In this document: in pieces, positions 30,214-36,200 of the stretch | Position numbering within the stretch: the first letter of the stretch is position 1 | How the letters are laid out: every line of letters begins with the position of its first letter | Origin: Oikopleura dioica | Lineage: Eukaryota; Animalia; Chordata | Direction of reading: 5' to 3' | Length of the DNA stretch: 64,000 nucleotides | Assembly: GCA_907165135.1 (NCBI GenBank) | Contig: OU015568.1 | Coordinates: forward strand, 4,588,001-4,652,000 | Program-made: the position numbers and the translations under genes | The notes under the pieces: model-generated | What the model was told of the DNA's origin: nothing | What the model saw: only the letters and a program-made list of their open reading frames with translations | The model's database searches: none

Positions 30214-33200
30214 TCACTTTTCCGAAGTTGCACCGGCTTGCCGCTTCGTCAGCAATTTTTTTCACTTCGGCGTAGTAAGCGAAGTCTTCTTGCACGCGAT
30301 TTATTTCTTGCAGAGCTTTGTCCCTCGGCTCCTGAACGATTATTGCATATCAAAGAGATGCCCCCTCCAAAAGCGTACCTTTTCTTTTGGCAAATCTGCA
30401 TTCATCTTCTTCAGCCAAGCTGGTGCGTCAAAGATGCGCTGGAAAAACTGGAGCTGGAGGTAAAAGTCCGAGATGGAATATTCGACCTTCAAAATGTCAT
30501 CTTCGCAGCTTGGAGAAGCAAAGTAACCCTTCGACCTAAAAATTTCAATGAACCAAAAATCATGAAATTATCTCTTACGTGTAATTGGGAGTGATGAATC
30601 TTGTCCGATAACCGTCCGATTCTCCGACTTGCCAGTTGCTGTAAACTCGTTTCATATGAAACTTGATGGCTTTTCTCAGCGCGCATTCGATCTCGCTCAT
30701 CTTTTCTCTCAACCCTTTTCCGTCGCTCATGCTTTGGCTAAAAGGAGGAACGAACAAGTCGCATGTGATCTTTTCCTCTCCGACGGTTAGTTCCAGCGGG
30801 TCACAATTGGCCAGTTTTTCTTCTTCTTTTTGACTGGCGATTCGGGCCTGAAAAATGAAAAGCTGAAAAAGATTGCTTCCGCCCGGGCTCGAACCGGGGA
30901 CCTTTCGCGTGTTAGGCGAACGTGATAACCACTACACTACGGAAACTTGAAAATAGCTCTAGAATTTGCTTATATGAATAAGAAATTCAAGATTTCACTT
31001 CATTTTCTTGGTTCGACCTGAGAATGGCAACAACGGCAACAAAGGCAACAAAGGCAACAACGGCAACATGTTGCCATTCTCAGGTTCTGATGAATTTTGC
31101 GCGATGTTTTTCTTGTTCTTTTTTTTTGAATTTTTTCTCTAGAGCGCAGCATACCATACAAAGATCAAAAAGGTTTTTCTCCCTTTTTGATCCTCAGACT
31201 TAACAAATGTTATGAATTTCGCAAAAGTATGGAACTCATTATGAGGCTCAATATCTGTGTAACTACAATATTTTAAAAGAAAAGTAAGAAATCAAAGAGC
31301 GAGTATGCGCTTCGCGCCTGATTTTAGGAAACTCAAGGAGTGAAAAAGAACCATTCTTTACAAAGAATGGAACCCGCCGTCACCCTTCTCTACCGCTTGG
31401 AATCTAATTTGCAAAAGCAAACAAGTTTGCTTCTAGAATGTTGCCGTTGTTGCCTAACTCAGGTTATGCGAAAATATGGATTCTTTTTATTCGGCCCTGT
31501 TGCCGTTGTTGCCTTTGTTGCCGTTGTTGCCGTGGTTGCCTAACTCAGGTTGTTCGATTTTCTTTACTGTAAGCTCTTTCAATGTGATCTATGGGATTCT
31601 TGACAGCTATATCGGCCGCTGATTGGCTAACGCCTAGAGTGCTGACCTATGATTGGCTGGTAATCCCCATATAACCCCTAAGACCTCCTTTTCTAAGATT
31701 TAGGCCGCTATTGACCGATATTATTGAGTAACTCACCAATTCTTCTTCTCTTTCCCTTCGTGCTAAAGTAGCAGCTCTAGATTTGAAGGCCGAGGGATCC
31801 ATTCCAAGGCGAGTGGCAATCTGCTGCTCATCAGTCGCCTCGATCGGGTCGAGCAAACGGCCGAAGACGGGAACGAGCTGATTTCGGAGGTAGTACTCAG
31901 TGTCGATTTCTTTCTTTTCTCGCGCCACTTCGCTCGGATGATAGGCTCGATCGGCTGGCTTTAGTTTTTCGTCTCCAGTGCAGATTATATACGGAACCTG
32001 AAGAGTTTTGTGAAGAAAAGAAGTGAAGGGAGGGAACTTACAGTGTCTCCAGACTTGAACTTGCCCGGCTGCTTTTTGTTCATTCTCAGGGCGACCTTGA
32101 CATGAGGCTGTCCCTCTCCACCAGGGATGTACATTCGCAGCGCAAAATCCGCAAAACAGCGCAAAATGCGGGATTTTTCATTCTGCAGCGCAAAACAGCG
32201 CAAAATCAGCCCCAAAAATTTCCGCAAAATTTCCGCAAAATTGCGCGCAAAAGCGCATTTTGCGCGAAAATTCCACAAAATCTCAATACATTTGCAGTCC
32301 GCAAAATGCAATTTTGCGGGATTTTGCGTAGAATTTCTACATTTTTTTATGTTAATTGTGAAGATTTCCGAATCAAATCCTCATTCATCATCGCATTCAC
32401 AACTTTGGCGGTAATTTGCGGAAGAAAAACTGAATAATCACCCGACATAAAACCGTCCGATATCGTAGTTACCCGACCAGTCATTTCAGGGCCGTTTCAG
32501 CCTCGTTCCTTGATTTCTAAATTTAAGGGCTTGACGGCCCTTCGGGCCGTTTCAGCCTCGTTCCTTGATTTCTAAATTTAAGGGCTTGACGGCCCTTCGG
32601 GCCGTTTCAGCCTCGTTCCTTGATTTCTAAATTTAAGGGCTTGACGGCCCTTCGGGCCGTTTCAGCCTCGTTCCTTGATTTCTAAATTTAAGGGCTTGAC
32701 GGCCCTTCGGGCCGTTTCAGCCTCGTTCCTTGATTTCTAAATTTATGGGGCTTGACGGCCCTTCGGGCCGTTTCAGCCTCGTTCCTTGATTTCTAAATTT
32801 AAGGGCTTGACGGCCCTTCGGGCCGTTTCAGCCTCGTTCCTTGATTTCTAAATTTAAGGGGCTTGACGGCCCTTCGGGCCGTTTCAGCCTCGTTCCTTGA
32901 TTTCTAAATTTAAGGGCTTGACGGCCCTTCGGGCCGTTTCAGCCTCGTTCCTTGATTTCTAAATTTAAGGGGCTTGACGGCCCTTCGGGCCGTTTCAGCC
33001 TCGTTCCTTGATTTCTAAATTTAAGGGGCTTGACGGCCCTTCGGGCCGTTTCAGCCTCGTTCCTTGATTTCTAAATTTATGGGGCTTGACGGCCCTTCGG
33101 GCCGTTTCAGCCTCGTTCCTTGATTTCTAAATTTAAGGGGCTTGACGGCCCTTCGGGCCGTTTCAGCCTCGTTCCTTGATTTCTAAATTTTAAAATCCAG

Positions 33201-36200
33201 CAAAATTCGCAAAATTACGCAAATTGCGTGTTTTTGCGCAATCCGCAATTCCACAAAAAGCGCAAAATCCGCAAAATTTCCGCAAAATCAAGAAATTACC
33301 ATTTTCCGCAAAACAGCGCAAAATTTTGCAATTTGCGCGATTTTCGGATTCCGCAGCGCAAAACAGCGCAAAATCGCCCACAAAAAAATCCGCAATCGCA
33401 GCGCAGCGCAAAGCAAAAATTTCTGCGAATGTACATCCCTGCTCTCCACCCTTTGGATACTGCTCGGGCGCTTTTGTCAACGCTTTCTGGATTCTAAAAT
33501 CAACAGTTCTGTAGTGCTTTTTGTCCAGCTTCGCCGCTATCTGCTCCAAATGCTCATGAATCTTCCGCACGCCTTCTTCCTCGTCTTGCTCGTGGAGGAG
33601 AAGTTTGATGATGGTTCGACCTTCGTTTCGGGCGATTTCGGACCAATCTCGTCGGACGATATCGAGACCTTTCAGTTCTTCTTTGCCATTTTGATCAAGT
33701 GCAGCGTATTTTTTCTTTTTCAAAAGAAGCATGGATTTGTAAGCGCCGTCGATGTCGATTTCTAGCAACCTGAAAGTGGGATTTTGATTGGTTCTGGTAG
33801 CAAAAGAGCGCTTTTGATTGGCTGTTACGTCTTGCATTAGACGTTACCTGTAGTGCTTGTTGACTTCCTTTTTGACCATATTTCCAAGCTTCATCACTTC
33901 CGAAATATTCGTCGAGTTTGAGTTGATCATGATCGAATCAGTATCGCCATAGACAACCTCCAAATTCATCTTTTCAACAAACACCTTTGTCGCTTCCAAG
34001 ATCTCTCTTCCCTTCGCTGTGATCAGCGCCGCCAAAGGTTGGGCATAAAATCTCGAAGCAGAGAATCCCAAACAGCCGTACATCGAGTTTGCGGTCAATT
34101 TCAAACCAAGTTGGCGAATGTTGAGTCGGGCGAGCTCGTCAGCGTTCTTTTCGGTTTTGATGAGCTTTTTGACTTCTTTTCGGCGATTGACGAGCTTCTT
34201 GATTTCGGAAGGAAGGATTCCTTCTTCCATCGTTTTGGGCACATCGGGAAGCCAGGTGGAAACGTCCTCGCCGGGTGGAGCTTGCATCGCTGTCGTCGTG
34301 AAACAGATGTTGTATTCTTGGATGATACTTGGGTAGAGACTGTTGAAATCAAGGAGGAGGATGTAGTTCGTGTAGAGACCTTTCTTCGGCTCAAGAACCA
34401 TTCCTCCAGCGTACTTTGGCCCCTTTTTATCGCCCCCATCTTCTGTGTTTTTCTTTCTGAATTGTGGAGGGGGAAGATGGTCTTTTTGTGAAACGCATGA
34501 AGAAGCAAATAAGCGTTTCTTTCAGCTCGGCCGCGGGAGAGAGTTCGGGAAAGGATGTTTCCGCAGATGTTGGTGATTTGGACGGCGAGGGGGAGACTTT
34601 GAATGTTGGAAGAAATCAGCATGTTGCGAAAGCAGTCGTTTACATTTTCCTGCAAGAGCATTCGCAGGGTATTGGAGCTGCCGAACGCTTCGACGATGTT
34701 TTCCGGCAAGTATTCCTTCCTGTTTCTGCAGGTTTCTAGGAAGACAGACTTCAACCCTTCCAGTTTTGCGGGGATTTGTTCTTCGCACAAACTCGTCAGG
34801 TTATAATCGCGCATTTTTACCAGCTCCATGGCTGAAGTCTTCGTGTCAGCCACCAATCGACCGCAACAGGCCTCCGATCCAGCTCGCATTTGCCCGATTT
34901 GGGAAGTCATTCTCGGCATTTCTTTTCGTTTAATCCGCCCAAGTCTTGACCAGCCATTGATGTTGTGAACCTTCATACGTTGCAGGAGGTATTCGAGCCC
35001 GAAGTCGAGTAAATCGTGACCAAGGATGATGTCTGGGTCGATTTGACGGAGTTCTTTGAGGAAGTAGTTCAATAGGTGCTTTTCGCCGAGACAGGATTGG
35101 ACTTTTTCGCTTTTGTTCACTTCCCCGTTCCAGTCATAAGGAAGCGTCATCGTTGCGGGCTTGGAAAGAGCAGTCATGATGTAGTCGTGTTCGGGCATTT
35201 TCTTAGTGCTGGAGAGGCGGAAGTTACTGTTGACGACCATTGTGAAGGCGGCGAGCTCGTTGGTCTTTTTCATTGGAATGGTTTTGAAGGAAAGAGAGAG
35301 AAGCGTAAGCTGAGGTTCGTGCATTTTGTCGCTGTCTGGGTGAACTTGGATGGCTTTGTAGTCGTTGCAGTCGAATTCGACGGAGCACCAGCTGATTGCG
35401 CCGCCTGTGATTGGTGAATAAGAGCCGTTGGCGACGGACAACCAGCATGGGCCCATGATGTTTCTTTCCAACGCGAAGAACTCGAACATCGGCTGGTTGA
35501 CGTTGAAGATCTGGGAGAAATGGGTGCCTTTCATATTGGAATGCATCAGAGGATTCTTCGGCCCGTACTCTACTCGCAAGTATTCGGCTTCGGGAGGGAC
35601 TCCAGCGCCGCCGAAGAAGTTCTTTTTCATTACCGGCTTTGCTTTCCAGGAATCGACCTTGTTCTTGTCCATCCACTCGCTTATTTCCTCGTAAACATCG
35701 CCTGTGTCTGAATCTCCTCGTGGGAGAATGTAGACCACGTGAGGAATATTCGAAACGATCAAGCAGCAACTCTTGAGCTCGCCGGCGACGTTTGCGCGGC
35801 CGGTAAGATACAGCTTGCCATTCTTTTGGAAGTAGTTTTCGTACGCATCGAGCCAGTAGAGATTCAAGCACTTTTCGTCGACTGGGTACTGAATTTCTTC
35901 ATCCTTGTCGAAATCCACACCGGTTTTTGTCGAGTTCCAGTCGATATGCTGGCTTTCTGGCTCTTCTTTGATTTGCTCAACTGCGGGTTTTCGCGATGTT
36001 GGACTTCGTTCTTCTTCCATACTAAAAGGAAGAAGTGAAGAAAAAGGATAAGAAAGTCAATAAGTGTCTTTTTAACGCTCCTTTTTAATTGGATGAAAAC
36101 AAATCGGCCAAAAGTACCTGATATTTTGAAGCTGTGAAGTCAGACTCGGCTCTCTTTTTGGCGCCGTATTTTCATCTTCTGGCATATCCTCGTGGAAAGC

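What the first reader, a model, noticed from the sequence alone, without database searches (positions are those of the whole stretch)
32108..33449. A hAT transposon caught turning into an intron inside the POLA1 polymerase domain, with its TIR supplying the splice donor
Seen: a 1320-bp element with perfect TIRs and an 8-bp TSD splits ...EQYPKGGE / [10 protein letters not shown] of an essential gene. On the coding strand the TIR starts CAG|GGATGT, the same AG|G pattern used by the other non-GT donors here, and a host CAG lies 6 nt past the second TSD. A GG-AG intron at 33438-32108 gives YPKGGEQPHV, in frame, one Gly shorter than the pre-insertion site and the same YP-x5-PH spacing I recall for vertebrate POLA1. 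Other in-frame solutions exist (GT at TSD1 with AG in TSD2, -6 nt; GA-AG, -3 nt). Established: hAT elements make 8-bp TSDs, and transposon-derived introns (introners) are known. Inference: CAGG-starting hAT ends act as ready-made donors for a spliceosome that accepts non-GT sites.
Basis: partly seen in the sequence, partly recalled or inferred. Interest (0 to 1): 0.85.

Follow-up and report, generated by a model that had tools for sequence, protein, structure and literature searches.

The report
Young transposon inside DNA polymerase exon
A 1.3-kb mobile DNA element sits in a coding exon of the essential DNA polymerase alpha gene in this genome but is missing from that site in the other individuals where the site could be read, so it is a very recent insertion that is either spliced out as a newborn intron or marks a broken gene copy, and no RNA was available to tell which.

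Summary
A 1320-bp element (32122-33441) has perfect 19-nt inverted ends and an 8-bp target duplication. It has no transposase. It splits the coding run ...[11 protein letters not shown]... inside the family B polymerase domain of POLA1 (minus strand).

- The insertion is polymorphic. DNA contigs of two other samples and two marine metagenome haplotypes show the empty site with the neighbouring intron retained, so they are genomic DNA.
- No RNA of this lineage could be laid, so splicing and the proposed GG-AG junction are untested.
- The "YP-x5-PH" spacing argument fails. Seven uninterrupted or reconstructed larvacean sequences from at least five lineages all have x6.
- At least 20 in-frame G*-AG pairs exist, and none restores the original peptide.

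New here: a sister larvacean species carries a 143-nt stem-closed intron derived from a CAGGG-ended element with an 8-bp duplication. It lies only 6 nt downstream, and GC-AG is its only G*-AG reading. So this kind of element can become an intron at this spot.

One caveat: the same allele shows a 1-nt frame break near 34481, either an assembly error or a second lesion.

First readers of this scan left about 35-40 unchecked notes on similar exonic transposons elsewhere in this genome.

Verdict: a real, young, hAT-like insertion and a candidate newborn intron. The mechanism is of a known kind (introners, MITE-derived larvacean introns).

The parts
32122..33441 (-). Non-autonomous hAT-like DNA transposon, 1320 bp, inserted in a POLA1 coding exon
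   Evidence: the internal ORFs have no Pfam match
33423..33441 (-). TIR at the 5' side on the coding strand (CAGGGATGTACATTCGCAG).
   Evidence: (I3)
32122..32140 (-). TIR at the 3' side on the coding strand (...CTGCGAATGTACATCCCTG)
   Evidence: (I3)
33442..33449 (-). Target-site duplication, upstream copy (coding strand GTGGAGAG). It fits nTnnnnAn.
   Evidence: D19
32114..32121 (-). Target-site duplication, downstream copy. It contains two weak candidate acceptors (GAG|).
   Evidence: (D19)
32108..32113 (-). Host GGACAG. The same host motif forms both intron borders in the sister species.
32489..33190 (.). Internal tandem array, 56-nt unit in 12.7 copies. Its k-mer depth in other individuals is very high, so it looks like a satellite.
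33191..33422 (-). Subterminal region with TTTTGCG-type short repeats (T-rich on the coding strand)
   Evidence: D2-D11
32141..32488 (-). Subterminal region with TTTTGCG-type short repeats in the same orientation. On the coding strand it gives a U-rich tract upstream of the element's 3' end.
33450..33769 (-). POLA1 exon part upstream of the insertion (...LLEIDIDG...[12 protein letters not shown])
32042..32113 (-). POLA1 exon part downstream of the insertion ([24 protein letters not shown])
31998..32041 (-). Ordinary 44-nt GT-AG intron. Its retention in the empty-site contigs shows that they are genomic DNA.
33770..33847 (-). Ordinary 78-nt GT-AG intron upstream
34478..34485 (-). 1-nt reading-frame break in the same POLA1 allele (CACAAAAAGACC). 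X3 contigs carry one extra A or G here, which restores H-K-K-D.
   Evidence: (table 4)

Best explanation
A non-autonomous hAT-type transposon jumped very recently into the thumb-loop coding segment of the DNA polymerase alpha catalytic subunit gene. The host is a larvacean tunicate, probably Oikopleura dioica or a cryptic sibling species (inferred). The insertion still segregates with the empty site.

Most likely the allele is tolerated because the element is removed from the pre-mRNA as a new, 1.3-kb, stem-closed intron. The perfect TIRs would pair and bring the two target-site copies together. A G*-AG pair at or next to the TIR/TSD would then be used, changing the variable loop by one or two residues. 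The best-looking pair is CAG|GGAUGU...ACAG|CCU, giving YPKGGEQPHV.

Shown: the insertion, its family features, its polymorphism, the tolerance of the loop to sequence change, and a fixed intron derived from the same kind of element 6 nt away in a sister species. Inferred: that this copy is spliced at all, and which sites are used.
For: - Anatomy of the element.
- Empty site: exact in X3 DNA at full single-copy depth. The joint runs 32113->33442 and skips 1328 nt, at depth 114 against 84-96 for neighbouring contigs. The 44-nt intron is kept in the same contig. The same empty site appears in metagenome haplotypes P0001/L005 and P0002.
- The loop varies among lineages (KGGEGQ, KGEDRV, KAGDGQ, KKGDGQ, KKGEGQ).
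- Sister species: contigs L002-L004 and P0376 carry a 135-nt CAGGG.../...CCTG palindromic element between two copies of ACGGACAG. It breaks the frame with a stop and can be removed as GC-AG to give GDGQPHV. A related copy lies in the next intron.
- The MFE and centroid folds close the window's element with the TIR stem.
- The U-rich subterminal repeats lie upstream of the 3' end in this orientation.
- A second TIR/TSD element interrupts a 226-codon ORF in the same window.
- Transposon-derived introns are reported for Oikopleura (PMC3443670, Table 1), and MITE-derived non-canonical introns for Fritillaria (PMC11282704). 11-12% of O. dioica introns are non-GT/AG (PMC8008620).
Against: - There is no transcript evidence. 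The RNA runs laid (X14, X15) do not carry this lineage's gene. No junction-spanning transcript peptide was found.
- No G*-AG pair restores the original peptide. Exact removal would need CA-AG or AG-AG.
- The proposed GG donor lies inside a perfect 19-bp stem.
- The element is about 27 times the usual intron length of this kind of genome (median 49 bp, PMC8008620).
- The insertion was seen only in the assembly, not in X3, X2 or the two metagenome haplotypes read across the site.
- The same allele has a 1-nt frame break near 34481.
Confidence: 0.5

Rival explanations
1. Null or strongly hypomorphic allele. The insertion simply disrupts POLA1 on one haplotype of the sequenced diploid animal. It is not productively spliced and survives because the other allele is intact. 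It is so young that selection has not yet removed it.
For: - The insertion was absent from every other haplotype that could be read at the site.
- Perfect TIRs and TSD indicate a very recent event.
- No exact-restoring G*-AG pair exists.
- The same allele has a second apparent lesion, a 1-nt frame break at about 34481. X3 contigs carry an extra A or G there, which restores the frame.
- The exact filled-allele ORFs are not on record elsewhere.
Against: - A sister species keeps a comparable element as an obligatory intron 6 nt away.
- The window holds another ORF-interrupting element.
- First readers flagged dozens more in this genome (unchecked). Null alleles could hardly be that frequent.
- Several in-frame, consensus-like splice pairs exist in a length- and sequence-variable loop.
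- The frame break lies in an A/G run where X3 haplotypes differ, a typical place for an assembly or polishing error.
Confidence: 0.38
2. The specific reading of the first stage: the element is already a functional GG-AG intron (33438..32108), with the donor supplied by the TIR and the host CAG as acceptor.
For: - CAG|GGATGT matches CAG|GTAAGT at -3 to -1, +1, +3, +5 and +6.
- ACAG| is the only CAG-type acceptor near the 3' end, whereas the two AGs in the TSD are GAG|.
- A GG-AG intron, CAA|GGAAGA...TAAG|CCT, is inferred in the neighbouring MCM gene (by homology from memory).
Against: - It is untested.
- The spacing argument (x5) is contradicted by x6 in all related sequences.
- The donor is buried in the TIR stem.
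- The first AG after the U-rich tract is out of frame with this donor.
Confidence: 0.22
3. Assembly artefact: the element was placed into the exon by misassembly.
For: - The filled allele was seen only in the assembly.
- The assembly may carry indel errors (frame break at about 34481).
Against: A misjoin would not create an exact 8-bp duplication of host sequence flanking perfect TIRs. The family is multicopy, with other flanks in X3 (table 7), as expected for a mobile element.
Confidence: 0.03

Closest known systems
Introners: non-autonomous DNA transposons that create introns (Micromonas, Aureococcus and others; Huff et al. 2016, Gozashti et al. 2022 PMC9860276, review PMC11282704)
   Same: - A TIR plus TSD element sits in a coding exon.
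- The model has the donor supplied by the element and the acceptor AG co-opted from the TSD. The sister-species intron here fits this exactly (GC from the element side, AG from the TSD).
- The element is multicopy and marine.
   Different: - The window's copy is 1.3 kb long and carries a satellite-like array.
- Its TSD is 8 bp, not 3-9 bp of another family.
- No exact-restoring canonical pair exists.
- Splicing is not shown.
- Genome-wide enrichment in genes was not tested here.
MITE-derived non-canonical introns of the larvacean Fritillaria borealis (Henriet et al. 2019, as summarised in PMC11282704 and PMC13326754)
   Same: - The host is a larvacean.
- The introns have TIRs and TSDs and are stem-closed.
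- The ends are non-GT, and the positions are lineage-specific.
   Different: - F. borealis uses mainly AG-AC and AG-AT ends, with a preceding TAC.
- This genome has ordinary GT-AG introns beside G*-AG ones.
- An AG-AG register exists here, but nothing shows that it is used.
Transposon-insertion introns reported for Oikopleura dioica (Denoeud et al. 2010, listed in Table 1 of PMC3443670)
   Same: Probably the same animal group, and the same proposed origin of new introns.
   Different: I could not read the original paper. A segregating present/absent exonic copy in an essential gene is a younger stage than fixed introns.
Splicing of Ac/Ds (hAT) insertions from maize gene transcripts (Wessler and colleagues, late 1980s; from memory; 'Zea' in Table 1 of PMC3443670)
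   Same: A hAT-family non-autonomous element in an exon is removed from the pre-mRNA using splice sites near its termini, leaving small in-frame changes.
   Different: - Plant rather than animal.
- The maize cases use GT donors inside Ds.
- They give leaky alleles rather than fixed introns.

Membership tests
hAT superfamily (non-autonomous member) | 8-bp target-site duplication | tested here: met
   CTCTCCAC occurs at 32114-32121 and 33442-33449.
hAT superfamily (non-autonomous member) | Target preference 5'-nTnnnnAn-3' (Hermes, PMC10368747) | tested here: met
   GTGGAGAG and its complement CTCTCCAC both have T at position 2 and A at position 7. A single site is weak evidence.
hAT superfamily (non-autonomous member) | Short TIRs beginning YARNG (consensus from memory) | tested here: met
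   The TIR begins CAGGG and is 19 nt, perfect.
hAT superfamily (non-autonomous member) | Related autonomous copy encoding a transposase with BED and hAT dimerisation domains | not testable with these tools
   The internal ORFs have no Pfam match. The large ORFs of the window include no hAT transposase. The rest of the genome could not be searched.
Introner / transposon-derived spliceosomal intron | Removed from the mature mRNA by splicing | not testable with these tools
   The only read-laying run showed that RNA runs X14 and X15 lack this lineage's gene. No RNA run holds the stretch.
Introner / transposon-derived spliceosomal intron | Transposon hallmarks (TIR, TSD) at the borders of an interruption of coding sequence | tested here: met
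Introner / transposon-derived spliceosomal intron | Many copies in the genome, enriched in genes | tested here: inconclusive
   The interior has roughly 20-40 times single-copy k-mer depth in X2 and X3, and five contigs show other flanks. The location of those copies is unknown. There are only unchecked first-reader notes on exonic copies of similar families.
Introner / transposon-derived spliceosomal intron | Splice sites supplied by the element and/or the TSD so that the reading frame is kept | tested here: inconclusive
   At least 20 in-frame G*-AG pairs exist, but none is exact. In the sister species the GC-AG register is exact.
MITE | Miniature size (below about 800 bp) | tested here: not met
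   The window's element is 1320 bp, of which 702 bp are a tandem array. The sister-species element (135 nt) does meet this.
Fritillaria-type non-canonical intron | AG-AC or AG-AT ends with a preceding exonic TAC | tested here: not met
   The registers available for exact removal are GT-TG, TG-GG, GG-GT, GA-TG, AG-GG, GA-GA, AG-AG, GC-GA and CA-AG (read). There is no TAC before the site.

The most novel reading that the evidence does not exclude
This genome hosts an active hAT-derived introner system in a chordate. CAGG-ended non-autonomous elements land in coding exons, fold into end-closing stems and are spliced with non-GT (G*-AG) donors taken from their termini. That would explain the origin of the species' roughly 11-12% G*-AG introns. 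The POLA1 copy would then be a segregating, newborn intron in an essential gene, with an older fixed counterpart 6 nt away in a sister species.
Probability: 0.3. Interest if true: 0.75.

Novelty: new member of a known kind. Interest (0 to 1): 0.5.

Why it matters
Intron birth is rarely caught while the filled and empty alleles still coexist.

If carriers of this allele splice the element out, a culturable chordate would offer a direct experimental system: genotype, RT-PCR, crosses. That system could show how a transposon becomes an intron, which ends are used, and whether hAT termini seeded the unusual non-GT introns of larvaceans.

If it is not spliced, it is an ordinary heterozygous loss-of-function insertion. 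It would then be a warning that exonic transposons in single-individual assemblies need RNA evidence before they are called introns.

Tried and rejected
- **RNA evidence.** Both run searches listed no RNA run that holds the stretch. The single read-laying run showed that X14 and X15 carry only a 35-nt conserved piece of a divergent orthologue.
- **Transcript-derived peptides across the junction.** Short-protein searches returned only genomic metagenome fragments. A region search with a tick POLA1 returned only distant animals and was wasted. The HMMER library search found no full-length close relative.
- **Other copies of the element.** The TIR scan of JGI metagenomes gave one hit, L007. It is a chance match in a bacterial-looking contig without the subterminal repeats.
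- **Filled-allele ORFs elsewhere.** Two look-ups by exact identity found nothing on record.
- **Array-unit targeting.** I tested whether the internal array unit matches host DNA beside the insertion, an idea from another first-reader note. The best match was 14/20, the same as in shuffles.
- **Short stem-closed, TSD-flanked introns.** A relaxed scan of the window gave only modest enrichment and was not interpretable.
- **YP-x5-PH argument.** Rejected on comparative data.
- **Denoeud et al. 2010.** The paper is not held.
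Full report
**What is there**

On the minus strand the window encodes the DNA polymerase alpha catalytic subunit.
- The exon ending at 33442 translates to ...LLEIDIDG...[15 protein letters not shown]. 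It aligns with solved human and other POLA1 chains up to ...ALTKDPQDYPD (E about 1e-23).
- tblastn with a rodent POLA1 covers residues 29-1423 over 37120-30373, and the two flanks of the finding are adjacent in the protein.
- Pfam PF00136 matches both sides.
- Between the flanks lies a 1320-bp element (32122-33441). It has perfect 19-nt terminal inverted repeats and an 8-bp direct duplication of host sequence, GTGGAGAG on the coding strand.
- The TIR occurs nowhere else in the window, with 0 expected by chance. A window-wide TSD+TIR scan gives 9 pairs against 0.4 in shuffles.
- The interior holds a 56-nt tandem array of 12.7 copies and many TTTTGCG-type subterminal repeats.
- Its ORFs have no Pfam match, and no hAT transposase lies among the window's large ORFs.

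The 8-bp TSD, the nTnnnnAn target pattern (Hermes, PMC10368747) and the CAGGG ends fit a non-autonomous hAT-type element.

**The insertion is polymorphic and young**

I laid two DNA contig sets and two RNA runs on 31000-35500.
- X3, from a different study, has a joint from 32113 to 33442 that skips 1328 nt. Nine letters fit either side. This is exactly the element plus one TSD copy.
- The depth at that joint is 114, against 84-96 for neighbouring single-copy contigs.
- The same 195-nt contig runs through the ordinary 44-nt GT-AG intron (31998-32041), so it is genomic DNA, not cDNA.
- The shorter side of the joint is only 28 letters. However, the next contig starts at 33442 with two unmatched letters, as expected for overlapping unitigs.
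- X2, from the same study as the best holder, also lacks the element. It joins 32122 to 33456 with CTTT between. That is one base short of the exact empty site, 6 nt away from the TSD. I cannot tell a read error from a variant.
- Independent marine metagenome contigs of the same lineage (96% protein identity) read ...[13 protein letters not shown]... straight through and keep the 44-nt intron (P0001/L005 and P0002).
- The element's interior has roughly 20-40 times single-copy k-mer depth in X2 and X3. Five X3 contigs continue from the TIR end into other flanks. The family is therefore multicopy.

The filled allele was seen only in the assembly.

**No RNA evidence could be obtained**
- No RNA run in the index holds the stretch.
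- The two raw-read RNA runs laid gave only 19 and 26 reads. All lie on a 35-nt conserved piece (33923-33957) with unlike flanks. They come from a divergent orthologue or paralogue.
- Protein searches for short transcript-derived peptides across the junction returned only genomic fragments.
- The exact ORFs that read from the exon into the element are not on record elsewhere.

Whether this copy is spliced, and where, remains untested.

Spacing: the uninterrupted larvacean sequences at this site read YP-x6-PH.

| Loop | Source |
|---|---|
| KGGEGQ | L005, P0002 |
| KGEDRV | L006 |
| KAGDGQ | L009-L011 |
| KKGDGQ | L008 |
| KKGDGQ, after intron removal | L002 |
| KKGEGQ-SH | P0386 |

The vertebrate-like x5 spacing is therefore not an argument for the GG-AG product. 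What the comparison does show is that the loop tolerates sequence change.

In-frame solutions:
- At least 20 G*-AG pairs near the ends are in frame, and none restores the original peptide.
- Exact removal is possible only in nine equivalent registers: GT-TG, TG-GG, GG-GT, GA-TG, AG-GG, GA-GA, AG-AG, GC-GA and CA-AG. None is of the G*-AG type.

Signals:
ACAG|CCT) is the best looking. This is my judgement.
- The two AGs inside the TSD are GAG|.
- The first AG after the U-rich tract is out of frame with that donor.
- The donor also lies inside the perfect 19-bp TIR stem, which closes the element in both the minimum-energy and the centroid fold.
- The subterminal repeats are U-rich on the coding strand at both ends. 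This orientation therefore offers a pyrimidine-rich tract upstream of the 3' end.

**A fixed counterpart in a sister species**

Three metagenome assemblies (L002-L004) and a fourth fragment (P0376) come from another larvacean, about 60% identical in protein. They read ...AAG GGC GAC GGA CAG / G CAGGGTTCGAT ... TTTCAAACCTG / ACGGACAG CCC CAC GTG.
- 135 nt lie between two copies of ACGGACAG. They begin (G)CAGGG and end CCTG.
- The insert folds as one long hairpin (z = -2.9).
- A related copy lies in the next intron of the same gene.
- Reading through hits a stop, so the 143 nt must be spliced in that species.
- Of the ten equivalent registers, only GC...AG is of the G*-AG type. It gives GDGQPHV, the sequence that intron-less relatives have (L008).
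- The insertion point is 6 nt, two codons, downstream of the window's.
- This matches the published introner model, where the donor comes from the element side and the acceptor AG from the TSD (PMC11282704, Fig. 2 legend).

It shows that CAGGG-ended, 8-bp-TSD elements do become introns in this very loop. It does not show that the window's copy is spliced. The sister species' splicing is itself inferred from the essential gene and the broken frame, not from RNA.

**A caveat on the allele**

The window's POLA1 changes frame between 34485 and 34476, at CACAAAAAGACC. X3 contigs carry one extra A or one extra G here, and either restores [14 protein letters not shown] (table 4). The site is an A/G run where haplotypes differ, so an assembly or polishing error is likely. 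If the break is real, the allele would be dead irrespective of the transposon.

**Context**
- The window holds a second TIR/TSD element (54772-55313, TIR CAGTGTTTGAAA, TSD GTCAGAAC). It interrupts a 226-codon ORF on the minus strand.
- First readers of this scan left about 35-40 notes on transposons in coding exons elsewhere in this genome. None has been followed up.
- If even a fraction of those hold, null alleles cannot explain them all. I did not test those notes.

**Known work**
- Transposon-insertion introns are listed for Oikopleura (PMC3443670, Table 1, citing Denoeud et al. 2010, which I could not read).
- MITE-derived non-canonical introns are described for Fritillaria borealis (PMC11282704, PMC13326754).
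- Introners are found in many aquatic eukaryotes (PMC9860276).
- 11-12% of O. dioica introns are non-GT/AG (PMC8008620).
- That the host is O. dioica is my inference, not a tool result. It rests on the tiny introns, the G*-AG introns, the marine metagenome matches and the pattern of runs.

**Verdict**

This is a real, very recent, segregating hAT-like insertion in an essential gene's exon.

| Reading | Probability |
|---|---|
| Removed as a newborn intron | about 0.5 |
| Null or hypomorphic allele | about 0.4 |
| Assembly artefact | about 0.03 |

The mechanism belongs to a known kind. The value of the locus is that filled and empty alleles coexist, so the question can be settled by a simple RT-PCR on genotyped animals.

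Noticed in passing
L002:1305-1456 (also L003, L004, P0376): A sister larvacean species has a 143-nt stem-closed intron in POLA1, 6 nt downstream of the window's insertion point. It is derived from a CAGGG-ended palindromic element with an 8-bp duplication (ACGGACAG). A related copy lies in the next intron (L003:1230-1293).
   Followed up: yes
window 34478-34485 (minus strand): POLA1 has a 1-nt frame break at CACAAAAAGACC. X3 contigs have an extra A or G that restores the frame. This is either an assembly error or a real lesion on the same allele as the transposon.
   Followed up: partly
window 54772-55313: A 542-bp element with a perfect 12-nt TIR (CAGTGTTTGAAA) and 8-bp TSD (GTCAGAAC) interrupts a 226-codon ORF on the minus strand (...CEKFESRQKLIPVFDLQKLEDTVWPTKSPIVL/TSTAQSSS...). 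It is another candidate exonic insertion.
   Followed up: partly
window 20546-20934 and 21053-21842: Two more elements with perfect 12-nt TIRs and 8-bp TSDs (CAGAGTTGGTAA with GCCCGGAC, and CTGGCAATTACG with AGTCGACT). They lie close together and apparently outside long ORFs.
   Followed up: no
window 32489-33190: The 56-nt array unit inside the element has k-mer depth hundreds to thousands of times single copy in two other individuals. It is probably an abundant satellite of this genome.
   Followed up: no
L001:654-786: A metagenome contig of a close haplotype (KGEDRV type) departs from its sister contig L006 exactly before CCT CAT (P-H). It continues for 124 nt of unrelated sequence to the contig end. 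This could be another insertion at the same spot, a rearrangement or a chimera.
   Followed up: partly
window 31100-31730: X2 and X3 contigs show several presence/absence differences in the 3' part of POLA1 (skips of 291, 127, 79-82 and 88 nt). This suggests polymorphic insertions or indels in introns there.
   Followed up: no
window 33455 (X2 contig): The X2 empty-site contig is one G short at CCTTTGG, which would shift the POLA1 frame. This is either a read error in a low-depth run or a real variant.
   Followed up: no
window 26700-26880 (minus strand): The neighbouring MCM gene seems to have a GG-AG intron (CAA|GGAAGAG...CTCTAAG|CCT) between ...RQLVLQ and [10 protein letters not shown]. The borders are inferred by homology from memory.
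   Followed up: partly
window 56835-61739: ORFs of a Ty3/gypsy-type retrotransposon (RVT_1, RNase H, integrase).
   Followed up: partly
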